Shown here: one piece after another, positions 5,926-63,185 of the stretch
How the letters are laid out: each line of letters opens with the position of its first letter
How positions within the stretch are numbered: position 1 is the first letter of the stretch
IMG/VR virus record: IMGVR_UViG_3300043409_000928
Coordinates: 62,001-126,000 of that record
Strand: one strand, 5' to 3'
DNA: 64,000 nucleotides
Program-made: the position numbers and the translations under genes
The notes under the pieces: generated by a model
The model's input: only the letters and a program-made list of their open reading frames with translations
Databases searched by the model: none
What the model was told of the DNA's origin: nothing

Positions 5926-6420
5926 TTATTTAAACAATTCTTTAAATTCTTTATTACCCATGTTTTGTGAAGTTGCTATTTCAGCTAATACTTCTGGGCC
6001 ATTTATTTCTCGGAACAGTTCAATTTCATCATTGCTCATTGCTGGAAACTTCTCAATGAGCCATGCTGTTAGCTTGTCTTTCTTTGCACCGCCAATTGGT
6101 GGAATAAATTCATGTCTAAGTTTAACGCCCAGTCCAACCAGTGCCAGGGCCTTCCATCGAAGTTCTTCATGTTCACTTGTGGTGGCAATGTAATCAATGT
6201 TGCTGTAGTTGTTTACATCTATTAGATACTGTTCCTGTACATCTCTAGTACCTTGTACTTGACTGGCCCAACGCTGTGCCATAAAAGTGTTTACCCCTTT
6301 TTTATCCTCATCAGATAACTTTGTGTAATAATCACCTTTACGCAGATCCACTGCCGCCATCAATTGGTCAATGGGAACTTTGTATACAGCAGATGCTGGT
6401 GCTTTCTTTTTGGTAGCCAT
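5926..6420 (-). CDS. Probable clamp-loader small subunit, gp62-like
   Basis: YYTKLSDEDKKGVNTFMAQRWAS resembles the gp62 family. Size and replication-operon context fit. Confidence 0.5.
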   Translation of the reverse strand: MATKKKAPASAVYKVPIDQLMAAVDLRKGDYYTKLSDEDKKGVNTFMAQRWASQVQGTRDVQEQYLIDVNNYSNIDYIATTSEHEELRWKALALVGLGVKLRHEFIPPIGGAKKDKLTAWLIEKFPAMSNDEIELFREINGPEVLAEIATSQNMGNKEFKELFK

Positions 6421-6429
6421 ACTGTTATT

Positions 6430-6936
6430 TTAAAACCAAATCTTGTTTAAGTCAAGCACTTCTGGAATTTTATTTGTTTCTTTTAAAAAGAAAGCACAAA
6501 CTGGTTCTTTTTTATGTTCTAAAGGAACTGCCAACACATGCCCAAACTTTAGCTTGGGCACATACCATTTTACTTCTTGGTAGATGTTGACTATTTCAAC
6601 CTTCATCCATTCGGGCTTGTAGCCGTTGATGGGATTAAAGACAAACGTGCTGAACCCACGGTCATTTAAACTCATTACATTGATAACTTCTGGCTCTCCG
6701 TGATCGGGTTCTCCAATAATCAGTGACCAATCTAATGGCACTTTGAGTTCATGACTTCCTATACGCAATACTGCCGCAGGACAACTGAAGCTTTCTAAGA
6801 AAACAAGTGGTACAAACATATAGTCAACATCAGCAGGATTGCTGTAGTCAAGTACCCCGTAGCGCAAGTCTTCATCAATTTCTTCTGGTAAACGATCTAA
6901 ATCGTATGACAGATTATCAACTGTTAATATTCTCAT
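6430..6936 (-). CDS. Hypothetical protein, possibly a degenerate Hint-like beta fold
   Basis: 168 aa, coupled to uvsW. Fold guess from the hydrophobic pattern only. Confidence 0.6.
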   Translation of the reverse strand: MRILTVDNLSYDLDRLPEEIDEDLRYGVLDYSNPADVDYMFVPLVFLESFSCPAAVLRIGSHELKVPLDWSLIIGEPDHGEPEVINVMSLNDRGFSTFVFNPINGYKPEWMKVEIVNIYQEVKWYVPKLKFGHVLAVPLEHKKEPVCAFFLKETNKIPEVLDLNKIWF

Positions 6937-8390
6937 TTATAAATTACCTTTTCAGTTTGATATGGATAGTTTGCTTCTTCATAAAATTTCTTGCGCTTGG
7001 CCAAGTGTCTTTTGGCAAACTTTGCTGTGCTTGTTATGTCCCATATCTGGACAAAGTCTTTGTCTTCTGCTTTTCTAATACCTCGGCCAATGCTCTGTAT
7101 AACCCTGACAAAACTCTTTCCAGGCTCCACTAGAACCAAGTTAAAGATCCTAGGTATATTAATACCCACAGAGGCCACACCATACGTGGCCACAATGATT
7201 TTATTTGTTGCAAGAGTAACTTCATCATACTCTTCTTTTCTATCCTTTGATTTCATGGACCCTGATACAAATACGCTTTCTGGTAAACGCTCAACCAGCA
7301 TCTTACCCGAAGCAATACGATCGACCAATACCAAAGTATTTCCACTTTGACTAATTGCATCAATGGTCTTGGCCAGTTCATCAATCCTGCGTTCATTGCT
7401 GGTCAGATATGTTAATTCTTCTTGATATGTTTTGTATTCAACTTTATCATCAAATTGCAATACCTTTACATGGCAGTTACTCAATACACCAATGTCCTGT
7501 AGTTCACTGGCCTGTAATCTATGTAGGACATTGCCCAATGATGCTGTTAGACTGATATATTCATGTTCTTCTTTGGGTATGGTACCTGTTAACCCCCAAC
7601 GAATTGGAACATTTGCAAACGGGCCCGTCAACATTGTTTTAAGTACATCAGCCTTGGCCATGTGTACTTCGTCAACAATTACTGCAATCAGGTCATCCGT
7701 AATTGCTTCAATGCCAATTGCACTGGTTCCTTCTTTGCTTCGTTTGATTAAGGAGTTGATACTTTGCCATGTTGCAATGGTATGTGTATGCCCAAGATCT
7801 TTCTCGTCACCAAAGTATACACCAACATCTAATCCCATGTTGACATAGTCTGCATGTGTCTGCCGCACTAGATCCTTGTTGGGTACAATAACAACTGTGC
7901 GGCCATACGGTTCACACGTAAGACTCATGGCCGCTGTCATTAATGTCTTGCCAGCACCTGTTGCAATCTCTTGAACACCATGCGGATTAGCAAGGAAGCG
8001 ATTGATACACTCTACTTGGTAATCGCGAATCTTAATAGGCTGGCCTTCTGCTACGTGTCCTTTGGGCCAAAGTATGTGACTAAAGGTGTCCTCGGTAACT
8101 TCAGCAAAATTGAAATTGTGCGCGGTCCGCTTGTCTTCAATTTCAATTTGCCAACCTTCCTCATCTATAATGGGCAATACTCGTTCTAATAGATTTAGAT
8201 AGGTCGACCCTGCGGTGGTAAAGAAGCTGATCTTACCATCCCATCTTCCTAGCCTAAAGGCCGGCACATGATAAGCATATGGTAATTGATATTTTAGTTT
8301 GGCTTCGCATCGTCTGCGTGTTGAAGCATCTAAGTCGTGAAACTTGACATTTACTTCATCTTTGATTTCTAATCGGCATATTCCAGGCAT
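6933..8390 (-). CDS. uvsW: UvsW-like SF2 DNA helicase
   Basis: IRDYQ, ATGAGKT, DEVH, LTGT, QSIGRGIR. Confidence 0.92.
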   Translation of the reverse strand: MPGICRLEIKDEVNVKFHDLDASTRRRCEAKLKYQLPYAYHVPAFRLGRWDGKISFFTTAGSTYLNLLERVLPIIDEEGWQIEIEDKRTAHNFNFAEVTEDTFSHILWPKGHVAEGQPIKIRDYQVECINRFLANPHGVQEIATGAGKTLMTAAMSLTCEPYGRTVVIVPNKDLVRQTHADYVNMGLDVGVYFGDEKDLGHTHTIATWQSINSLIKRSKEGTSAIGIEAITDDLIAVIVDEVHMAKADVLKTMLTGPFANVPIRWGLTGTIPKEEHEYISLTASLGNVLHRLQASELQDIGVLSNCHVKVLQFDDKVEYKTYQEELTYLTSNERRIDELAKTIDAISQSGNTLVLVDRIASGKMLVERLPESVFVSGSMKSKDRKEEYDEVTLATNKIIVATYGVASVGINIPRIFNLVLVEPGKSFVRVIQSIGRGIRKAEDKDFVQIWDITSTAKFAKRHLAKRKKFYEEANYPYQTEKVIYK

Positions 8391-28867: not shown

Positions 28868-31252
28868 TTAGCGTGTGCCGCCGGCAATCGCGCCAGTGTT
28901 GACAATCCTAACTGGAATGTAGATGAATTCTGCGGCTTTGACTGGCTCGATTGCCACATCAATGTACAGTTCATTTCTATCAATTCTAGTTGGAGTGTTA
29001 TTTGTTTCATCACAAACTACCAAGAAGTCGTATACGGCTCTCTTAGTGAATAAGTCTTGCAAAAATCCAGAAAATACTGCAATTACACGATCTCTAGTTT
29101 TCTTGTCGTTTGGTTCAAAGATGAACGGACGAGCAATAACATCAAAGCGTTCACGCAAGTACGCTAATAGTCGACCCACGTTAACACGATCTAATGCTGA
29201 ATCAAATGGGTACAATGTTTTTTGTCCCCAAATGTACAAACCTTGACCAGGGTAGTTAACCAATGGATTGATTTTCTTCAAATACAATGTATCTCGCTGG
29301 CCTTGGTTCAGTGCCACTGGAACAAATTCATTCTCGGCATTAACTAAACCTAAGTTGCTGATACCGCTCAATGAACCGCGAGTTAAACCAGCTGGGGCAA
29401 ACCATGGATAACTAACTTGGTCGTTATAAGCAATACCACGCAGAACTGCATGACTTGCTGGAACAGCAACATCGTTACCCAGTAAGTCTGTAGACAATGC
29501 GCTTGGGTAGTAAATTGCTACAGCACCATTGCGACTTGTTAAGCCATCTGCACCGTTTGTGCCTGCTTCTGTACCGTTGGCCCATGTAGTAACATCGCTC
29601 ATTTTTGCTGATAACTTCATTGGGGTATCAGCAATAACAAACGCTGTTTCTTTACGGTCCACGTTCAACGTAATCATTTCATCAATACACTCAACATAAC
29701 CTGGTGTTGCTATAATGTTAAATGTCAATGTTTCTGCACGAAGATCTTCGTTGTCTGTTAGTGCGGCTTGTAAACGCTTGACTACTACACGGCGTTGGGC
29801 CTTTTCAAACATGTAAGGGGCGCCTGCTTTAAAGCCACTGTCAACATTGCCAGACTCTGACTGCCAGTGTCCTTCTGCAACATTCCATGCTTTTACGTTG
29901 CCTGAACTTAATGCGCTGTTCCATAGAATCATACCGTCTGGATAAAACGCTGGGTTTGGAACTTGATCATCCATTGGTGTTGCACCGCCGCCAACACCAG
30001 TTGAATCTGCTAATGTTGCTGTTAAGTCAACAAACAATGCGCCATCTGGAGTAGACTGATCGGCGTTATCTTTCTGTACCCAATCGCTACCATTATACAT
30101 TTTAATTACAGGATAGTTGGCTACATCGTTAGTATCAATCCAAACATCACCATTGCTTGCAGTTGAAGGTTCTTCAGTGTTTACACTGACATTTTGAACT
30201 GCTTTCCATGTTGGTAAGCCACCAACTGTGTCTTTAACATAGATATCAACTGTGTCGCCTGCATCGTACCATAACTTACCATCAGGGATAGCACCAGTTG
30301 GAGCATTGGCTGTTGCTGATGGTGAAATTGTTACCCAGGCCGCGCCGTCGTAACGCTTGACTTCAAACTTGGCTTCGTTGTCATCTGCAAACTGTAGATA
30401 AAGATCATTAGTATTTAGAGCTGAGCCAAACGCAGTAGTTGCAGTTGCATTGTCTAGATAACCCACTAACTTGTCAACTGTATTTGGACCAATAACTTGT
30501 GCTGTCCAGCTTTGAGTTGTTGAATTGTATTTCTTTAATTTAATGTTTAATCCTGCATTAGGACTTGTTGTCTTAAACCATACGTCACCAGTAAGCGACC
30601 CTGTTGGTACTGAATAGTGAGGTGCAACAGTAACATTCTGGCTTAAATTGCCTGCTGTCACAGTTTTCCAAACGCCAGCAACTTTCTTATAAAAAGTTTT
30701 TACTGTGGCTGATGTTACATTTAGTGCGTACTGTCCATTGGAACCAACACTGGCACCTGGAACGCCATCAGTTGTTAGAACTGGTTTGACTTGCCATGCT
30801 GTACCAGTGTATTCAAAAATACCATATGTGCTTGCATCTGTATCTAACCAATATTGATTGTTGGTTGGAGGACCAAACGGAGCAGTTGCTTGTGGCTCCA
30901 ACTCTTCCATTTTTAAATCTGCTCGTACTACAATAGCACGGTTGGCGATACCTAAATAATAATAGGCGGCCAACAAGCCGTATTCGTTTAATTCGTGACC
31001 GTGTACTGGTGTACCGTCAACAATGGTGAACTCTGGTTCACCGTATAACTGTACCAACTCGCGCTGGCTAGTTAAAATAAGTGGTTTTTTGGCAAATGGT
31101 GCTGTGGTATAAGTTGCTGTTGATCCGTCTGGTGCTGTTTTGTTAGAACGAGTTGCTAACACAATGACAGGTACAGTTCCATTACCGGCGCCGGCGTAGG
31201 CACTTTCATCAATAATCGAAACGCTTACGCCTGGGGAAACTAGCTGAGCCAT
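28868..31252 (-). CDS. gp18: Tail sheath protein, gp18-like
   Basis: MAQLVSPGVSVSIIDES, YPWFAPAGLTRG, RVNVGRL, IFEPND, AIEPVKAAEFIYIP. Confidence 0.95.
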   Translation of the reverse strand: MAQLVSPGVSVSIIDESAYAGAGNGTVPVIVLATRSNKTAPDGSTATYTTAPFAKKPLILTSQRELVQLYGEPEFTIVDGTPVHGHELNEYGLLAAYYYLGIANRAIVVRADLKMEELEPQATAPFGPPTNNQYWLDTDASTYGIFEYTGTAWQVKPVLTTDGVPGASVGSNGQYALNVTSATVKTFYKKVAGVWKTVTAGNLSQNVTVAPHYSVPTGSLTGDVWFKTTSPNAGLNIKLKKYNSTTQSWTAQVIGPNTVDKLVGYLDNATATTAFGSALNTNDLYLQFADDNEAKFEVKRYDGAAWVTISPSATANAPTGAIPDGKLWYDAGDTVDIYVKDTVGGLPTWKAVQNVSVNTEEPSTASNGDVWIDTNDVANYPVIKMYNGSDWVQKDNADQSTPDGALFVDLTATLADSTGVGGGATPMDDQVPNPAFYPDGMILWNSALSSGNVKAWNVAEGHWQSESGNVDSGFKAGAPYMFEKAQRRVVVKRLQAALTDNEDLRAETLTFNIIATPGYVECIDEMITLNVDRKETAFVIADTPMKLSAKMSDVTTWANGTEAGTNGADGLTSRNGAVAIYYPSALSTDLLGNDVAVPASHAVLRGIAYNDQVSYPWFAPAGLTRGSLSGISNLGLVNAENEFVPVALNQGQRDTLYLKKINPLVNYPGQGLYIWGQKTLYPFDSALDRVNVGRLLAYLRERFDVIARPFIFEPNDKKTRDRVIAVFSGFLQDLFTKRAVYDFLVVCDETNNTPTRIDRNELYIDVAIEPVKAAEFIYIPVRIVNTGAIAGGTR

Positions 31253-31297
31253 ATAATATCTCCGTTATCTAAGGGTTATTCATACCCTTCATGGAGA

Positions 31298-31303
31298 TAT
31301 TTA
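31298..31303 (-). promoter_or_regulatory. Late promoter TAAATA of the sheath gene
   Basis: Overlaps the 5' arm of an SD-occluding hairpin. Confidence 0.75.
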
Positions 31304-31355
31304 GCTGATACAGTTAAAAGTGAGCCTATTTAGCGGAAGTGGTAGATTTACAGTT

Positions 31356-31976
31356 TTACTGGACAATCATTGCCAACTGTTTGTAAAGAGCATCAACTGT
31401 GCTGTTGTTGTCTACTATATAGTCAAAATTGGTTCCAACCCATGCTGTTTCACTAGCATGAATATCTGGGTATGCAATGGCCATATGGTTGAAGTTACCT
31501 CGATTTGTTTCAACCGCAACATCGTACCATTCTGGGTCTTCTCCTCGCACTACCCTGATCACTTGGCCGCCAGCATTTCTAATTGCTTTAATTTCATTGG
31601 GAAATCTACAATCTGATATTACAATATTGTCTGTGGTATTTTGTAATCTTGCTTCTAAGCTAGCAATCCAGATATCATCATGAAAGCTTTTGCGGCAGAC
31701 TTCTGTACCCCACCATTGAAGTACCCAGCGTGGGGTTAGATTTGGCATACCTAAGCGTTCTGCCCACCAAGGATCTACTTGTTCTCGCCATTCACGGGCA
31801 CTCTTAGTGCGGCCTTCAAGTAACTCGCGGTTCCATCCAAATACTGCGGCAACTGCATCTTTAAGAGTTGCGGCAAAGGAGTCTCTGCGGAACTCATAGA
31901 AGTTTACAAGATAATCTGCGGCAGTGTCCTTGCCTGAACCAATGAAACCGCAAATACCAATAATTTGTTTAGTCAT
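31356..31976 (-). CDS. Deoxynucleoside monophosphate kinase, T4 gp1-like
   Basis: GICGFIGSGKDT, TPRWVLQWWGTE, ISDCRFPNE. Confidence 0.9.
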   Translation of the reverse strand: MTKQIIGICGFIGSGKDTAADYLVNFYEFRRDSFAATLKDAVAAVFGWNRELLEGRTKSAREWREQVDPWWAERLGMPNLTPRWVLQWWGTEVCRKSFHDDIWIASLEARLQNTTDNIVISDCRFPNEIKAIRNAGGQVIRVVRGEDPEWYDVAVETNRGNFNHMAIAYPDIHASETAWVGTNFDYIVDNNSTVDALYKQLAMIVQ

Positions 31977-31981
31977 AAACT

Positions 31982-32010
31982 ATTGTAGCATAACTATAAC
32001 ACTAGGTCAA
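31982..32010 (-). promoter_or_regulatory. sigma70 promoter of dNMP kinase, leaderless
   Basis: TTGACC-17-TACAAT with TGn extension. ATG follows after 5 nt. Confidence 0.85.
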
Positions 32011-32015
32011 TGCTT

Positions 32016-32642
32016 TTACTTTTCGTATTTTACCATAAAGTCGGTACAGGTTCTGTACATTTGTGGGACCAAGTTCTTTTCTTTTTCAATTAGCCTATGT
32101 AGGTCTACAAATTGCTCTGCATAGTTTACTGCTCTTAATGCATTCAAAACCAACTCTACACAACTTACATGAGTGTCATCTGCCAAGTCAAACAAGTCAT
32201 CGTACGGCTTACCCTGTTGTTTTAGTAAAGCATCAATAATTTTGGTCCACTCTGTATTGTCAATGTTATTTGGTGTCAGTAAACAAACTGAATCACAAGC
32301 AAATACTTGATCAAATGTAGAATAGTGTACACCTACCCCAGTGGCTTCTACAAACTTAAAGCTGGCAGTATCTGTTGGATCAGTGATATTATCGCAGTTC
32401 ATTAAGGCATGAGTATAGTTTGCCCATATACCAGTCTTGGCCCATGACAAGAATGAAACTATAATACTACTAAGATGGTGCTTCTCTCCTGTTAAGATAA
32501 TGTAATATCCACTGGCCAGCACTTGGGCAATTTCCGTTTTATCAGTTACCGTAACGTAGGTTTTTTTGCTCCAAGAAATTTTGCCCGGCATCATTGCTAC
32601 CCAATGGTATAGCTTGTATAATAGTGTGGAATACTTAGACAT
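32016..32642 (-). CDS. Permuted papain-like NlpC/P60 (YiiX/YebB-type) enzyme
   Basis: His before Cys: YTHAL...GKPYDDLF...SCVELV. Confidence 0.75.
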   Translation of the reverse strand: MSKYSTLLYKLYHWVAMMPGKISWSKKTYVTVTDKTEIAQVLASGYYIILTGEKHHLSSIIVSFLSWAKTGIWANYTHALMNCDNITDPTDTASFKFVEATGVGVHYSTFDQVFACDSVCLLTPNNIDNTEWTKIIDALLKQQGKPYDDLFDLADDTHVSCVELVLNALRAVNYAEQFVDLHRLIEKEKNLVPQMYRTCTDFMVKYEK

Positions 32643-33394
32643 TATCCAAAAATAAATCCCAGTGGTGTTCCACCTTCGGAATATGTTTTTAAATCTTCCT
32701 CAAGCTTTTCCATTTCTGCTTGACCTTGGGCAATTAGGTCGTTGCCGTTTAGCTGTACACCACCTTGCGGACCGGCTAATTGACTGTACTTGCTACGAGC
32801 TTGGCCAAGTGTAAGCTTAGAAACTGCAAGAGCAAATTCACGCACCCAAGGTCCGGAACTGGTGTCTAGTAACAGCATTTCATCTGGGCGATAGTTATAA
32901 GTGTGTACAATAATACTTTCTTCAGCTTTCAAATAACGCTGTAGATTTAATCTCTTGCTGGTGTTAGACCAGTTATACACCAGGTAGGCTCCAAACATTG
33001 TTGCCATTAATTCACGCTGTCCCATGTACAATTCAAAAGATGCTAGGCCACCTTGTCTGATTGAATTCAACATGTACATGTTTAAGTAGCCTGCTTCAAA
33101 GGGATCAAATCCTGTTGCACCACTACTGTCGCTCATGCCGCCGCTATTTGCACGGTATACATTTCGTACATCAATTACTTCATTTGGTAGTGTGTATTCG
33201 CTTTCTCCTGGCGTAATTTGTAACACCATAAAGCTTTCTTCTACCGCCCGACTACTACGCTGACGATATTTGGATACGGCACGATCAATTGCCATATCGT
33301 AGTGTTCTTTATCCAGCTCTACATCAACCATACCTCCGCCGAGGTTCAGTTCAATATATTTTTGAGCTTTAGATCTTTGTGTTGTTTCTGACAT
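32642..33394 (-). CDS. gp13: Neck protein, gp13-like
   Basis: LGGGMVDVELDKEHY, LGQARSKY, GGVQLNG, PLGFIFG. Confidence 0.85.
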   Translation of the reverse strand: MSETTQRSKAQKYIELNLGGGMVDVELDKEHYDMAIDRAVSKYRQRSSRAVEESFMVLQITPGESEYTLPNEVIDVRNVYRANSGGMSDSSGATGFDPFEAGYLNMYMLNSIRQGGLASFELYMGQRELMATMFGAYLVYNWSNTSKRLNLQRYLKAEESIIVHTYNYRPDEMLLLDTSSGPWVREFALAVSKLTLGQARSKYSQLAGPQGGVQLNGNDLIAQGQAEMEKLEEDLKTYSEGGTPLGFIFG

Positions 33395-33410
33395 AGGGTG
33401 TCTCCAGGAC

Positions 33411-33416
33411 TATTTA
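33411..33416 (-). promoter_or_regulatory. Late promoter TAAATA of gp13, inside a hairpin loop
   Basis: Lies in the loop of the 11-bp inverted repeat at 33393-33431. Confidence 0.75.
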
Positions 33417-33436
33417 CCGAAGACACCCTATAAAAC

Positions 33437-34690
33437 TTACTTGATTGCTCGGAGCAAGATCGTTTCTGGACTAATGCGTCCTTTTAGCCTTGTTTCCACT
33501 GACCTAATGGTGTCCATAAACTTACGCAATCCGGGCTTGCCTTGTGTCTTAAACTCTGCCAGCTTTTCTGCGGGTTTACGCAAGGTCTTGCAGGTGCTCT
33601 TGATCTCATCAAAGCCAATGATAGCAGAGCCCTTAACGCCCAACTGTCCCACTACCATGTCGCCATGCATGGCTACAACAAAGCGACCCAACTTACGAGT
33701 CTTGGTATTGTAAGTCCACAGCTCACTCATTTCTAGAATCTCAGTTGGATTGATACTCTTAAGACCCAGCTCAGCAAACTCTCTAAGATACTTTAGACCT
33801 TTAACTTGGCGCTCAGGTGGCACAGGCTTGCGCTTGGGTTTGGCACGGGTGGCTATTTTACTAGTCTTGTATGCACTGGCATCATTGATGATTGCCTCGT
33901 AGAACTTGATTAATGCTTTGACATCACGCTTGTTCATGTGTTTGTAACCCTCCATGAGCTGGCTGTCTCTTCCTTCTAGCAATTCATTTAGTTCGTTAAT
34001 TTTAGGTTGTATTACTTCTGCCACTTTGGCAATGTATTGCACAGAAATGTTTTGCCCTTGGAAGAATTTGTAAGCAGAAAATTCCTTGCCTTCTAAAATA
34101 TAGTCGTCAATTGCTCCTTCAACTTCTCCCATTGCTTCGCTGAACTTTTCAGCAAGCCTGTCTTGTATTGTTTCTTTTTTGACTACTGGTACTGCTGGAT
34201 CAACTACCACAGTTTTCTCAGACGCAAGACGAGCTTCCAAGTTTCCAATTAGCTGATGGATGTGACGCTCCTCATCATTTTGCAGTTCAAATCCTGCCAG
34301 CACCATACGGCACACCCAACCAACTGTTAAAGTATACTGGCTGTCATTGACTGATTTGAACTTGGCAGGATAATGTGCCAATTCTTCTTTGGTAGCACAG
34401 TATGCGTCAAAGAACGCCCTGGCATCTTTATGGTCACAGGAGTAGTTGTACCAGTTAAACGCACGGCTCATTTGAATCCTGCGTTGTACTTCATCCCATG
34501 CGGCTTGTTCGGTCCATTCTGGTTCATGCCCCATACGATGGATGTCTGTGACTTGGATGGCTTTTAGCTTGGGCTTGCCACTGGCATCAAATTTTACTGT
34601 ACCAGAGTCTTTGGCAGTACGAGTGCTTCGGCCCAGTGTTTTTTTCTTTTTAGGGGGTTTTGCGACTGTGCGTTTTGTTGCTGTGGCCAT
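33437..34690 (-). CDS. Early protein of unknown function, 417 aa
   Basis: SD GGAG, perfect sigma70 promoter, basic N-terminus. Confidence 0.8.
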   Translation of the reverse strand: MATATKRTVAKPPKKKKTLGRSTRTAKDSGTVKFDASGKPKLKAIQVTDIHRMGHEPEWTEQAAWDEVQRRIQMSRAFNWYNYSCDHKDARAFFDAYCATKEELAHYPAKFKSVNDSQYTLTVGWVCRMVLAGFELQNDEERHIHQLIGNLEARLASEKTVVVDPAVPVVKKETIQDRLAEKFSEAMGEVEGAIDDYILEGKEFSAYKFFQGQNISVQYIAKVAEVIQPKINELNELLEGRDSQLMEGYKHMNKRDVKALIKFYEAIINDASAYKTSKIATRAKPKRKPVPPERQVKGLKYLREFAELGLKSINPTEILEMSELWTYNTKTRKLGRFVVAMHGDMVVGQLGVKGSAIIGFDEIKSTCKTLRKPAEKLAEFKTQGKPGLRKFMDTIRSVETRLKGRISPETILLRAIK

Positions 34691-42532: not shown

Positions 42533-42589
42533 CTGAGTATATACTCCCTTATGTTAGCGTATGAGTGATCGATTCATACGCTTCAGGAC

Positions 42590-42595
42590 TATTTA
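42590..42595 (-). promoter_or_regulatory. Late promoter TAAATA of the fibre gene
   Basis: The leader carries a 9-bp hairpin (AGCGTATGA/TCATACGCT) and SD GGGAG. Confidence 0.7.
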
Positions 42596-42657
42596 CCCAA
42601 AATCTCTTTTAATTGCCTGTTACGGTCTAAAATACCACATGTAATAATTGTGTAATA

Positions 42658-60387: not shown

Positions 60388-62166
60388 TTAGTTAATTTCA
60401 TTCACTTGTGTATCTGTGTCAAGCATGGTAAATCCACTTTCTTTGACTACCAAAAGTACATTGTTGACTCGACTTGCTAACTCGTCTCTATGCGAGATTA
60501 AGAAAATATTTCGATTCATTTCTCTACCCATGGATTTTAAGATTGACATTGAACATTCAATACCAACCTGATCCATACCTGAATCCACCAACTCATCAAT
60601 AAACAACAAGTTCATTGGTTCAGTAAAGCTCTCATACACATCTCTAAAACTCCAGCTTAGTGCTAGAATTAATCGATTCCGTTCGCCCCTACTCAAGTTA
60701 TCAAAATCAAAGCTTTGACCCAGTTGGTTGATATCAACTTCTAAATCGCTTCTAAAAGAAACTTGATGCGGCAATTGTAACTTATCCAAGTAATAACCCA
60801 ATCTGTGATTCAAATACGCTAAATTCTGTTCAATAATGCGTTTTCGGACAAATGAGTCTTTGCTTGTAAGTAACTTGAGCAAGAATTCTTGATGTTCAAG
60901 CAGTTTACTTACCCTGTTAATTTCATCCCAGCTAACCTCTGCAAGCGCAGTATTTTTAAGAGCTTCAATTTGTTCCTGATAAGGATCTTCTTCTTGGTCT
61001 TTTGCTTCTAGTTGTTTTCGAATGTTTTCTAGATTATTTTTATGTGCCGCGGCATCCTCTACATTTTGATATTTGGTCTGAGGTCTTGCCGGCAATTGAT
61101 TAATAGTACGCACTACCATGTCAGCCTGCGCCAAATAGCCATGTTCTTCTTTTAATGCAGTATCAGTTACTTTAACAGTATTGGTTGCAGATGCAACCAT
61201 TTCATCGTGCTTCTCGTCATGTACATCTTGCCCACAACTGGGACATTGATGTTCTTCGATTAAAGACAAGCTTCGTTGTGCTGACACAAGTGCATCTTGC
61301 AATTTCTTAACATTGCTTTGTCTTGTTGCCAATTCTTTATTGGCTAACTTTAGGCGATTTTCGTTTTCCTTATAAACAGCAAGGGCTCGATGAGAATCAA
61401 GTTCCAAATCAATATCAGTGTTTTCTAATTCAGTGATAGCAGATACATAGGCAGTAAGATCATCTGTTTTCTTTTTGACCCACGTTCGCGAACGGCGTTG
61501 CAAATCTTCTACAGTTGTTTGTACTCTGACATTGCTTTCTTGTAAAGCTTTGATTCGTGCTTCCTCATCGCGCACTTGCTCTTTACTATTTTTAATTTGT
61601 TCTCGTAGTAACTCAGCCTTTTCACTCAACTGAGTAATGCCAAGCAGTTCTTCGATGATGTCTCTTTGATCGTTTGATTTCAAACTTAAAAACGGTTGTG
61701 TATATGTGTTTAGTGCAACCAGATGTTTGAACATCTCGCTACTCATGCCAATAATGCGACCAATTGCTTCTTGTGTGACTCTATTCTCACCAGCACCTTC
61801 ATCTGTACCAGCTTCGTTGACTTCATGATCGTCAACAATAAAACGTAACAGGTTAGGCTTGCGACCACGCTCAATCCTATACTTGTTGCCGTTCTTTTCA
61901 AATTCAACTGTGACCAACATGTTATTAATGTTGGTCTTATTGATCAAGTTTTCTTTGCGAATGTTGGTAAGAGCTGATCCAAAGATAGCATAGCTGAGTG
62001 CGTTAACAATGGTGGTCTTACCTACACCGTTTCTAGCACCGTCGCCGCCTAAGTCTAAGTTATGCCCTAACACAAGAGTCAATCCATACTGATCCAGTAG
62101 AAGGGCCTGGGTAACATTACCCACGCTCATGAAGTTTTTGATTGTTATATTTTTAAACTTGATCAA
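60388..62166 (-). CDS. gp46: Recombination endonuclease ATPase subunit, gp46/SbcC-like
   Basis: NGVGKT, Zn hook CPSC, LSRGE, LFIDE, ISH. Confidence 0.93.
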   Translation of the reverse strand: MIKFKNITIKNFMSVGNVTQALLLDQYGLTLVLGHNLDLGGDGARNGVGKTTIVNALSYAIFGSALTNIRKENLINKTNINNMLVTVEFEKNGNKYRIERGRKPNLLRFIVDDHEVNEAGTDEGAGENRVTQEAIGRIIGMSSEMFKHLVALNTYTQPFLSLKSNDQRDIIEELLGITQLSEKAELLREQIKNSKEQVRDEEARIKALQESNVRVQTTVEDLQRRSRTWVKKKTDDLTAYVSAITELENTDIDLELDSHRALAVYKENENRLKLANKELATRQSNVKKLQDALVSAQRSLSLIEEHQCPSCGQDVHDEKHDEMVASATNTVKVTDTALKEEHGYLAQADMVVRTINQLPARPQTKYQNVEDAAAHKNNLENIRKQLEAKDQEEDPYQEQIEALKNTALAEVSWDEINRVSKLLEHQEFLLKLLTSKDSFVRKRIIEQNLAYLNHRLGYYLDKLQLPHQVSFRSDLEVDINQLGQSFDFDNLSRGERNRLILALSWSFRDVYESFTEPMNLLFIDELVDSGMDQVGIECSMSILKSMGREMNRNIFLISHRDELASRVNNVLLVVKESGFTMLDTDTQVNEIN

Positions 62167-63185
62167 TGTGTAAGTCCTTGATAGATATGTGCCAGTATTT
62201 GCTTATCAATTTGAGCAGAGTCAATTGCTTGTATCTGATTTAATACAATAGCATCAACTGATTCAAACTGTAGTTCGCCACCCTTCCATTCAGTTGAGTG
62301 TTCTTCTTTCTTGGTTGGCATTAGACTAAGCTCTCGCATTCCATATTCGTTGACCCATTTTTCTTTAATATAGGTTGCTTCTTCAAACGAAATATCAACA
62401 TCAATTGTAACACGGGCAAAAGTATGTTCATCAAACAAACTCTCATGTTTATCAATTGCATCTGTTAGTGTTAGTGTTCTAAATTTTGGGGCACTGGGCC
62501 AGTTTTGGAATTCTGGTTGACCACCATATTCTAAAAACATGCAACCACGCTCGTCATCCCACGCATCGGCGTAGTTGTGCGGGAAACAATTTCCCATGTA
62601 TACAACATTACCTCGCTTTTGTCGTTTATGAAAGTGTCCAGAAAATACAAGCTCTTGGTTGGGAAAGTGTCCTTCGTTCAATCCGCCATGGTCTGGCATT
62701 TCTACCATGGCATTCATTTTAAAATGTGGAAGTTCAAAGTGTCCAAATACATAACGACTCTTTAACTTTTTCATGTTCTCCCATTCACTGCCAACAAGCC
62801 AAGGAACAATTGTCATATCACCGATGGTTGTAATCTCATCAATCAAGTTAACATTGCTCAAGTGTCTAGCAAACGGGAGTGAGTTGATTTCACGCTTCTC
62901 TCTATATGCCAAATCATGGTTACCCATAATAATGTATACCTGCTCAAAGTTTTCTGAAAGGTACTTGACATTTGAAGTAGTGTAGTTGAGTGTGCTCACA
63001 TTCACAGTGGATCTGTTGTTGTGCCAATCGCCAAGGAAGATGCAAGTTTCAGCACCTGCTCGTTTGGCTTCTTGGGTCATCCATTTTATAAAGTTCTCAC
63101 AATCATCATTGTGAGCTCTACTGTTGTTTCTTAAGCCAAAATGAATATCTGTAAAGCACACAGCTTTTTTAAAAGGTTGAGTCAT
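62163..63185 (-). CDS. gp47: Recombination endonuclease nuclease subunit, gp47/SbcD-like
   Basis: DIH, GDW, GNHD, GHFE, SGHFH. Confidence 0.93.
   Translation of the reverse strand: MTQPFKKAVCFTDIHFGLRNNSRAHNDDCENFIKWMTQEAKRAGAETCIFLGDWHNNRSTVNVSTLNYTTSNVKYLSENFEQVYIIMGNHDLAYREKREINSLPFARHLSNVNLIDEITTIGDMTIVPWLVGSEWENMKKLKSRYVFGHFELPHFKMNAMVEMPDHGGLNEGHFPNQELVFSGHFHKRQKRGNVVYMGNCFPHNYADAWDDERGCMFLEYGGQPEFQNWPSAPKFRTLTLTDAIDKHESLFDEHTFARVTIDVDISFEEATYIKEKWVNEYGMRELSLMPTKKEEHSTEWKGGELQFESVDAIVLNQIQAIDSAQIDKQILAHIYQGLTH

What the first reader, a model, noticed from the sequence alone, without database searches (positions are those of the whole stretch)
31253..31303. Second, independent RBS-occlusion hairpin at the dNMP kinase to tail sheath junction
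Seen (minus strand): AAUAUCUCC-AUG-AAGGGU-AUGAAUA-ACCCUU-AGAUAAC-GGAGAUAUU-AU-AUG. The 9-bp outer stem sequesters SD GGAG. Its 5' arm overlaps the late promoter TAAATA plus the next 5 nt, so a late transcript excludes it exactly. The sequence is unrelated to the gp13 hairpin. These are the two places in the structural block where a sigma70 gene reads into a virion gene, and both carry the device.
Basis: partly seen in the sequence, partly recalled or inferred. Interest (0 to 1): 0.7.

Follow-up and report, generated by a model that had tools for sequence, protein, structure and literature searches.

The report
RBS-hiding hairpin before tail sheath gene
The tail-sheath gene of this uncultured freshwater jumbo phage starts with an RNA hairpin that hides its ribosome-binding site in transcripts coming from the upstream early gene. 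The phage's own late promoter starts transcription just inside the hairpin and so leaves the site open, which is the trick phage T4 uses for its lysozyme gene.

Summary
The hairpin is real. On the minus strand, AAUAUCUCC (31301-31293) pairs with GGAGAUAUU (31263-31255) around an inner 6-bp stem-loop. MFE is -20.6 kcal/mol, z = -3.5.

The 5' arm is the last five bases of a TAAATA box plus the next four. The genome has a gp55-type late sigma, and TAAATA boxes precede many virion genes. The T4 spacing rule puts the late start at 31292, one base past the arm.

In six lake metatranscriptomes the deep sheath contigs never pass 31292. One ends exactly there, and depth upstream is 0-5x.

The pairing holds in about 50 distinct relatives' leaders with compensatory changes. 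In 47 of 49 the SD's partners lie 5' of the predicted late start. RaK2, PA5oct and Atu_ph07 show the same layout with unrelated sequences. T4 gene e, scored the same way, gives the same geometry and energies.

It is a new member of the known T4 e/soc/49/I-TevI device, not a new mechanism.

The device also sits at the endolysin and at a 162-aa ORF. A second, invariant TAAATA lies 30 nt upstream, and its transcripts would keep the hairpin. Translational repression itself is inferred, not shown.

The parts
31982..32010 (-). Sigma70-type promoter of the dNMP kinase gene (TTGACC, 17 nt, TGnTACAAT). Its -10 box ends 5 nt before the ATG, so the mRNA is probably leaderless.
   Evidence: The same geometry is conserved in most relatives.
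31356..31976 (-). dNMP kinase gene (206 aa), the presumed early gene that reads toward the sheath gene. No terminator-like site was found between its stop and the sheath ATG.
   Evidence: phrog_139 E 4.7e-56; Pfam DNMK; terminator scan. dNK-sheath synteny holds in 52 of 58 relatives and in RaK2.
31328..31333 (-). Distal TAAATA box (cgcTAAATAgg). It fits the genome's late-promoter consensus. It is invariant in relatives and always 28-30 nt upstream of the proximal box. Its role is unexplained.
31298..31303 (-). Proximal TAAATA box, taken as the -11..-6 element of the late promoter that makes the translatable sheath mRNA.
   Evidence: T4 rule from PMC2988020; gp55-like sigma in the genome.
31293..31301 (-). 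5' arm of the outer stem (AAUAUCUCC). The anti-SD core CUCC lies at -4..-1 of the proximal promoter.
31292..31292 (-). Predicted late transcription start (A). The 29.6x metatranscriptome contig of run X20 ends exactly here.
   Evidence: record 12, 30968-31292; no deep RNA contig passes this base in 6 runs.
31271..31289 (-). Inner stem-loop (AAGGGU / 7-nt loop / ACCCUU). It is kept in the late mRNA 3 nt from its 5' end. The likely roles are a helper of outer-stem closure and/or a 5' stabiliser (inference).
   Evidence: Conserved with changes on both sides (GGGU/ACCC, GGGC/GCCC, AGGGA/UCCCU). A similar 5'-proximal stem-loop sits in the 998-aa tail-fibre leader.
31255..31263 (-). 3' arm of the outer stem (GGAGAUAUU), containing the Shine-Dalgarno GGAG. 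The start codon follows 2 nt later.
28868..31252 (-). Tail sheath gene (794 aa).
   Evidence: phrog_10581 E 3.4e-219; 41% identity to the PA5oct sheath; covered 23-73x in metatranscriptomes.
33396..33428 (-). Sister device at the gp13-like neck gene: GGGUGUCUUC, loop with TAAATA (33416-33411), GGAGACACCC. Predicted late +1 is 33405.
   Evidence: (largest long-minus-short RBS-opening cost of 28 genes, 16.2 kcal/mol). RNA contigs end at 33381-33392.

Best explanation
This is a T4 gene-e-type translational filter. RNA that enters the sheath leader from upstream carries the 5' arm AAUAUCUCC. The most likely source is the sigma70-driven, probably leaderless dNMP kinase transcript, since no terminator intervenes. 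The arm pairs with GGAGAUAUU, helped by the inner stem-loop, and buries the Shine-Dalgarno sequence 2 nt from the AUG, so ribosomes load poorly. After replication, host RNA polymerase carrying the phage's gp55-like sigma starts at the proximal TAAATA. The start is at A31292, one base past the arm. The anti-SD is encoded by the promoter's own -9..-1 bases, so the late mRNA cannot contain it and its RBS is open. Shown: the structure, its conservation and covariation, the promoter motif and the sigma gene, and the position of the abundant RNA's 5' boundary. Inferred: read-through of the early transcript, and reduced translation of the long form.
For: Fold: MFE -20.6 kcal/mol, z -3.5. Late machinery: a gp55 homologue (T4 gp55 E 1.6e-5; phrog_12791 E 5e-90). 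s-s-TAAATA-g boxes lie 15-75 nt before the tube, neck, fibre and other virion genes. This resembles the Aeh1 variant (a/g)C-TAAATA (PMC2988020) and the ATAAATA motif predicted in the RaK2-like phage CBB (PMC5259590). RNA: in 6 metatranscriptomes the sheath is covered 23-73x, but contigs end at 31211-31292. X20 ends exactly at 31292. Upstream depth is 0 in five runs and 4.8x in X20. Conservation: in 51 distinct leaders the RBS-opening cost is 12.3 kcal/mol for read-through RNA, 11.4 from the distal box and 5.7 from the proximal box. Against shuffled upstream segments it is 13.3 vs 7.3, with 38/49 at z>2. Covariation: 81% of cells are paired vs 38-57% when partners are slid; 17 both-side changes vs 7.1 +/- 2.1 shuffled, 0/500. 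Compensatory pairs sit at columns 12-53, 13-52 and 14-51, outside both the promoter and the SD. Frequent U.G wobbles indicate RNA rather than DNA pairing. Geometry: in 47/49 leaders the SD's MFE partners lie 5' of the predicted +1 and never inside the late leader. Replication: unrelated sequences with the same layout occur at the gp13-like gene, the endolysin (phrog_894) and a 162-aa ORF, and at the sheath genes of RaK2, PA5oct and Atu_ph07 (z 4.3-8.7). Positive control: T4 gene e scored identically gives 16.0 long vs 5.1/2.6 short. Its 5' arm likewise overlaps a TAAATA box and the bases that follow it. Published mechanism: PMC3014915.
Against: No direct evidence shows that long transcripts exist across the junction; no RNA contig bridges 31293-31302. 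No evidence shows they are poorly translated. The contig end at 31292 comes from assembled contigs without strand information, so a strain-variant bubble or a processing site could also give it. Taken alone, the part of the stem upstream of +1 is short and AU-rich, and in many close relatives it is not individually better than chance. The subgroup L053-L056, together with L002, L004, L014 and L049, shows weak or no excess occlusion. The invariant distal TAAATA fits the late consensus at least as well as the proximal one, and it would make hairpin-bearing RNA. That is awkward for a pure early/late filter. The short late leader still has a residual opening cost of about 6 kcal/mol, because the SD can pair with the conserved UUUCCCC in codons 5-7.
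Confidence: 0.62

Rival explanations
1. The hairpin works within the late period. The distal TAAATA is an active late promoter, and its hairpin-bearing mRNA is a masked or throttled pool. The structure would then set sheath dosage or timing, be opened by processing or by a factor, or mainly protect the RNA. It would not filter early read-through.
For: The distal box is invariant, fits the genome consensus (TAAATAg) and keeps 28-30 nt spacing in all groups. In the 53-55% identity group the anti-SD begins almost at the distal box's predicted +1. PA5oct keeps the hairpin although the upstream gene is a virion protein followed by a terminator.
Against: No deep RNA contig reaches the distal start (about 31322) in any of six runs, and depth upstream of 31292 is 0-5x. 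No partner factor is known. T4 gene e has two late promoters yet works as an early/late filter.
Confidence: 0.15
2. The complementarity is a by-product. The promoter box (TAAATAT) and the SD plus AU-rich spacer (GGAGATAT) are each conserved for their own function and happen to be complementary. No regulatory structure forms.
For: Most invariant columns of the stem belong to the promoter or the SD. The truncated duplex is not individually significant in many close relatives.
Against: Compensatory changes occur in stem positions outside both elements (GC/AU/GU at 12-53, UA/AU at 13-52, AU/GC at 14-51). The stem lengthens to 11 bp in L050. Distant relatives, cultured phages and three other genes of this genome reach the same layout with unrelated sequences. 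The SD's partners are always 5' of +1.
Confidence: 0.1
3. The inverted repeat acts on DNA, for instance by cruciform or hairpin extrusion that presents the late -10 box to the polymerase, as in phage N4 virion-RNAP promoters.
For: In the gp13-like, endolysin and 162-aa genes, in the distant sheath leaders and in PA5oct, the TAAATA box sits in the loop of the repeat.
Against: U.G wobbles are common in the stem (16 and 12 of 28 sequences at two pairs), and these would be A.C mismatches on the other DNA strand. In the window's group the box lies in the arm, not the loop. The 3' arm always contains the SD, which a DNA-level role would not require.
Confidence: 0.05
4. The hairpin is a terminator or attenuator for the dNMP kinase transcript.
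For: A stable stem lies at the end of the upstream gene's transcript. In X20 the low-depth upstream contig stops at 31303.
Against: No U tract follows the stem, and the scan finds no terminator-like site here. RaK2 and PA5oct have a separate canonical terminator in addition to the hairpin.
Confidence: 0.04

Closest known systems
Phage T4 gene e (lysozyme) translation-initiation hairpin with internal late promoters
   Same: The SD is sequestered by a 5' arm that overlaps a TAAATA box and the bases that follow it (T4: AAUACCUUC / GGAGGUAUU; here: AAUAUCUCC / GGAGAUAUU). Late starts fall inside the structure. There are two TAAATA boxes. Computed RBS-opening costs are alike: 16.0 long vs 5.1/2.6 short in T4, 14.3 vs 6.0 here. 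The mechanism is described in PMC3014915.
   Different: The gene is the tail sheath, a major virion protein, not a lysis gene. An extra conserved inner stem-loop is retained in the late leader. In T4 both late promoters start inside the structure, whereas here the distal box lies upstream of the whole hairpin. The phage is a distant jumbo lineage with a 328-aa gp55-like sigma (T4 gp55 is 185 aa).
T4 soc, gene 49, I-TevI; Aeh1 mobE; T4 segB leaders
   Same: All are inhibitory helices over the SD and/or AUG on early or middle read-through RNA, relieved on late-promoter transcripts (PMC3014915).
   Different: Those genes are accessory, nuclease or homing-endonuclease genes. None of the cases listed there is a tail sheath or neck gene. 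For I-TevI the proposed purpose is to protect intron folding.
Sheath leaders of the cultured jumbo phages RaK2, PA5oct and Atu_ph07
   Same: All have an anti-SD arm 5' of a TAAATA box, an SD-containing 3' arm and nested inner stems. RaK2 also has dNMP kinase (gp1) directly upstream of the sheath gene (gp18).
   Different: The primary sequences are unrelated and the anti-SD lies 14-35 nt upstream of the predicted +1. RaK2 and PA5oct add a canonical terminator before the device. The papers I could search on PA5oct and CBB (PMC7318152, PMC5259590) do not describe the structure.

Membership tests
T4-type late-promoter-in-hairpin translational occlusion (e / soc / 49 / I-TevI class) | The SD and/or AUG is sequestered in a stable helix on the long transcript. 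| tested here: met
   Computational only. MFE and centroid pair all of GGAG. RBS-opening cost is 14.3 kcal/mol long vs about 6 short. T4 e control gives 16.0 vs 5.1/2.6.
T4-type late-promoter-in-hairpin translational occlusion (e / soc / 49 / I-TevI class) | A T4-type late promoter (TATAAATA-like -10 box) is placed so that late RNA lacks the 5' arm. | tested here: met
   TAAATA is 31303-31298 and the predicted +1 is 31292, one base past the arm. RNA contigs end at or before 31292, one exactly at it. 47/49 leaders have the SD's partners 5' of +1.
T4-type late-promoter-in-hairpin translational occlusion (e / soc / 49 / I-TevI class) | The phage has a gp55-type late sigma that uses such promoters. 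| tested here: met
   A 328-aa ORF at G000:C1 126493-127479 (L083 1285-2271, minus strand) matches T4 gp55 (E 1.6e-5), phrog_12791 (E 5e-90) and phrog_234 (E 4e-24). TAAATA boxes precede virion genes.
T4-type late-promoter-in-hairpin translational occlusion (e / soc / 49 / I-TevI class) | Early or middle transcription from upstream reads through into the gene. | tested here: inconclusive
   A sigma70-like extended -10 promoter precedes the dNMP kinase gene, and no terminator lies between it and the sheath gene. RNA over the kinase is low (0-10x), and no contig bridges 31293-31302.
T4-type late-promoter-in-hairpin translational occlusion (e / soc / 49 / I-TevI class) | The long transcript is translated much less than the late transcript. 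| not testable with these tools
   This needs reporter fusions, toeprinting or ribosome profiling.
Intrinsic (Rho-independent) terminator | A G+C-rich stem immediately followed by a U tract. | tested here: not met
   The stem is followed by AUAUGGCUCAG. No terminator-like site is reported on the minus strand between 31253 and 31356.
Any curated Rfam RNA family | A covariance-model match. | tested here: not met
   No match at E <= 1 in 31000-33600 on either strand.

The most novel reading that the evidence does not exclude
The invariant distal TAAATA, always 28-30 nt upstream, is a second late promoter. Its transcripts carry the complete hairpin and form a translationally masked pool of sheath mRNA. 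The hairpin would then gate or meter sheath synthesis within the late period, unmasked by processing or a factor or simply setting dosage by the ratio of the two promoters. This control would be conserved across the RaK2/PA5oct/Atu_ph07 jumbo-phage clade.
Probability: 0.12. Interest if true: 0.6.

Novelty: new member of a known kind. Interest (0 to 1): 0.4.

Why it matters
The finding extends a classic T4 post-transcriptional device from accessory and lysis genes to a major virion gene. It also extends it to a deep, mostly uncultured jumbo-phage clade, where it recurs at the sheath gene with unrelated sequences. That recurrence means selection acts on the layout rather than on the sequence.

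In practice it gives annotators a rule for these phages: a TAAATA box with an anti-SD just 5' of its start marks a late gene that is exposed to foreign transcription. It also marks the late promoter and its start point in a lineage where late promoters have only been guessed from motifs. RaK2 and PA5oct are cultured systems in which the rule can be tested directly.

The unexplained distal box is the one part that could hold something new.

Tried and rejected
- DNA search of the phage collection with the locus found nothing. Relatives came from a protein search and from IMG/VR.
- A duplex test used only the segment upstream of +1 against the RBS, with mononucleotide shuffles. It was too blunt for the short AU-rich stems of the close relatives: 17/53 at p<0.05, mostly distant relatives and cultured phages. 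It was replaced by the whole-leader opening-cost test.
- I looked for a natural control in subgroup L053-L059, which seemed to lack dNMP kinase and shows weak occlusion. The upstream 170-aa gene there is not detectably a dNMP kinase (E 0.036) but also has a strong sigma70-type promoter, so it is not a clean control.
- A leaderless mini-ORF starting at +1 (AUG AAG GGU AUG AAU AAC CCU UAG) was rejected as a feature. The AUG is present only in the window, L002 and L014.
- Terminator, Rfam-family and DNA-cruciform readings were rejected for the reasons given under the rivals.
- No alternative fold that would free the SD in distal-promoter transcripts was found.
- The PA5oct and CBB papers do not mention the structure.
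- No protein-complex or structure jobs were needed.

Full report
**Context**

The window is bases 62001-126000 of a 285-kb IMG/VR virus record from freshwater. Its sheath protein is at most 41% identical to those of PA5oct, Atu_ph07 and RaK2-type jumbo phages.

On the minus strand the gene order is:
- a 417-aa ORF (34690-33437);
- a gp13-like neck/adaptor gene (33394-32642);
- a 208-aa ORF;
- dNMP kinase (31976-31356);
- tail sheath (31252-28868);
- tail tube (28845-28240).

**The observation**

- The 5' arm AAUAUCUCC is 31301-31293.
- The inner stem is 31289-31284 paired with 31276-31271.
- The 3' arm GGAGAUAUU is 31263-31255.
- The start codon is 31252.

ViennaRNA returns this structure as both MFE and centroid. 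The energy is -20.6 kcal/mol, against -11.3 +/- 2.7 for dinucleotide shuffles (z -3.5, none of 200 as stable). No Rfam family matches, and the hairpin is not terminator-like.

**Is TAAATA a late promoter here?**

- The genome encodes a gp55-type late sigma: T4 gp55 hits a 328-aa ORF at E 1.6e-5, which matches phrog_12791 'sigma factor for late transcription' at E 5e-90.
- TAAATA preceded by G/C and usually followed by G lies 15-75 nt before the tube, gp13-like, tail-fibre-like, decoration-like and other virion genes.
- The review of T4 late transcription places TATAAATA at -13..-6. It also notes an (a/g)C variant at -13/-12 in phage Aeh1, which is what is seen here (PMC2988020).
- An ATAAATA late motif and a gp55-like sigma were predicted for the RaK2-like phage CBB (PMC5259590).

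By that rule the proximal box (31303-31298) gives +1 = A31292. The 5' arm is therefore -9..-1, and the anti-SD core CUCC is -4..-1.

**RNA evidence**

Six lake and freshwater metatranscriptomes hold this phage or a strain about 99% identical to it.
- In four of them the sheath gene is covered at 16-63x up to 31228-31274. The bin 31277-31457 has zero depth in all four, and the kinase gene has 0-10x.
- In X19 the 73x contig ends at 31211, with nothing upstream until 31740.
- In X20 a 29.6x contig runs 30968-31292 and stops exactly at the predicted +1 with no unaligned tail. A separate 4.8x contig covers 31303-31494.
- For the gp13-like gene (predicted +1 33405), contigs end at 33381-33392.

There are caveats. 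These are assembled contigs without strand information, depth is a contig mean, and a strain-variant bubble or a processing site could also end a contig. The six-fold or greater step in depth at the leader is nevertheless seen in every run. It fits the proximal promoter, not the distal box or read-through, as the source of the abundant mRNA.

**Relatives**

IMG/VR gave 80 loci with sheath identity from 91% to 53%.

*Both boxes are conserved.* Both TAAATA boxes are present in every locus with enough upstream sequence, 28-30 nt apart.

*Close relatives (66% identity or more).* The layout equals the window's. An alignment of 28 distinct leaders has 81% of stem cells paired, against 38-57% when partners are slid by 1-3 columns. 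It has 17 both-side changes against 7.1 +/- 2.1 in shuffles (0/500). Compensatory pairs occur at three positions outside both the promoter and the SD: GC/AU/GU, UA/AU and AU/GC/GU. U.G wobbles are frequent, which points to RNA-level pairing. In L050 the stem grows to 11 bp.

*Distant relatives (53-55% identity).* The anti-SD has moved between the two boxes and the proximal box sits in the loop. The stems reach 14-15 bp and are unrelated in sequence, as in L068, L071 and L073.

*Folding across leaders.* Over 51 distinct leaders, the mean cost of opening the RBS is:
- 12.3 kcal/mol for read-through RNA;
- 11.4 kcal/mol for RNA from the distal box;
- 5.7 kcal/mol for RNA from the proximal box.

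With the segment 5' of +1 shuffled, the long-RNA cost falls from 13.3 to 7.3, and 38 of 49 leaders have z>2. In 47 of 49 leaders the MFE partners of the SD lie 5' of the predicted +1 and never within the late leader.

*Exceptions.* Occlusion is weak or absent in L053-L056, L002, L004, L014 and L049. A stricter duplex-only test is not significant for many close relatives.

I ranked all 28 genes of the genome that have a TAAATA box 10-80 nt upstream by long-minus-short opening cost.
- First is the gp13-like gene, at 16.2 kcal/mol.
- Second is a 222-aa gene, at 13.1. It is an endolysin (phrog_894) with UAAAACUUCCAU / AUGGGAGUUUUA around the box. This is a direct counterpart of T4 gene e.
- Third is a 162-aa ORF, at 9.9.
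- Fourth is the sheath gene, at 9.4.

The cultured phages RaK2, PA5oct and Atu_ph07 all have an anti-SD arm, a TAAATA box, nested inner stems and an SD arm before their sheath genes. Their z values are 4.3-8.7. RaK2 also has dNMP kinase directly upstream of the sheath gene. RaK2 and PA5oct add a canonical terminator before the device.

**The upstream gene**

The kinase gene has TTGACC-17-TGnTACAAT ending 5 nt before its ATG, with no SD. This geometry is conserved in most relatives, so the mRNA is probably leaderless.

The 417-aa ORF before the gp13-like gene has a perfect TTGACA-17-TATAAT. In my scan these are the only sigma70-like hits of 10/12 or better on this strand in the core of the structural block (window about 16-54 kb). 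A weak 10/12 hit also sits before the 981-aa gene at its far edge.

**Comparison with the known**

The review PMC3014915 describes inhibitory helices over the RBS of T4 e, soc, 49 and I-TevI. [quoted passage not shown]

I scored T4 e with the same script.
- The arm AAUACCUUC pairs with GGAGGUAUU.
- Its 5' arm likewise overlaps a TAAATA box and the bases that follow it.
- The opening cost is 16.0 long against 5.1 and 2.6 short.

The sheath hairpin is thus a close structural analogue of the T4 e device. It meets the testable defining features. Read-through is only inferred, and differential translation cannot be tested here.

**What remains unexplained**

The distal TAAATA (31333-31328) fits the late consensus and is invariant. 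Transcripts from it would be occluded, and the RNA data show no step at its predicted start. It may be a weak or conditional promoter, or it may be part of a dosage control. I could not decide between these.

**Verdict**

The finding is a new member of a known kind. Its main interest is the clade-wide conservation at a major virion gene and the metatranscriptomic support for the late start.

Noticed in passing
window 31976-32010 (minus strand); also genes 6933-8390, 62163-63185 and 5926-6420: The dNMP kinase gene has an extended -10 sigma70-type promoter ending 5 nt before its ATG and no SD, so its mRNA is probably leaderless. The geometry is conserved in most relatives. At least three other genes in or near the window show a promoter-like -10 box 5-6 nt before the start codon.
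   Followed up: partly
L084 358-1075 (G000:C1 45157-45880, minus strand; outside the window): The endolysin gene (phrog_894) carries a 12-bp SD-sequestering hairpin with a TAAATA box at the 5'-arm/loop junction, so a late start would lack the 5' arm. This is a direct counterpart of the T4 lysozyme (gene e) device.
   Followed up: partly
L085 770-810 (G000:C1 about 240069-240110, minus strand; outside the window): A 162-aa ORF of unknown function has an 11-bp hairpin AAAAGCCUCUG / UGUGGAGGUUUUUU with TAAATA in the loop. It is a fourth instance of the device.
   Followed up: no
window 31328-31333 (minus strand): A second TAAATA box is invariant in all relatives and always 28-30 nt upstream of the proximal one. 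Transcripts from it would keep the hairpin. It is the only tandem pair of boxes found before any gene in the genome.
   Followed up: partly
window 42533-42600 (minus strand), leader of the 998-aa tail-fibre-like gene: The late leader has a stable stem-loop (GCGUAUGA...UCAUACGC) beginning about 3 nt after the predicted +1, like the inner stem-loop of the sheath leader. These may be 5'-terminal stabilising hairpins on abundant late mRNAs.
   Followed up: no
G000:C1 126493-127479 (L083 1285-2271, minus strand), just beyond the window end: The gp55-like late sigma is 328 aa, against 185 aa in T4. The T4-like part aligns only to residues about 177-290, so there is an N-terminal extension of about 170 aa with no assigned function.
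   Followed up: no
window 31269-31292 (minus strand): In this phage the predicted late mRNA would begin with AUG and encode a 7-codon mini-ORF ending at UAG just before the SD. The AUG is not conserved (only the window, L002 and L014), so it is probably incidental.
   Followed up: yes
window 28943-28960: RNA contigs from several metatranscriptomes break between 28943 and 28960, inside the 3' end of the sheath gene, while the tube-gene contigs extend up to 28943. This could be a strain-variable spot or an internal RNA end.
   Followed up: no
L087 1407-1500 (RaK2) and L086 1384-1500 (PA5oct): Both cultured phages have a canonical intrinsic terminator after the upstream gene in addition to the SD-sequestering hairpin. 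In PA5oct the terminator's 5' arm itself contains a TATAAATAGGGGC motif.
   Followed up: no
window 31228-31240 (minus strand), sheath codons 5-7: The conserved UUUCCCC (coding Val-Ser-Pro of the sheath N-terminus) can pair with the SD in the short late leader. This gives a residual RBS-opening cost of about 6 kcal/mol.
   Followed up: no
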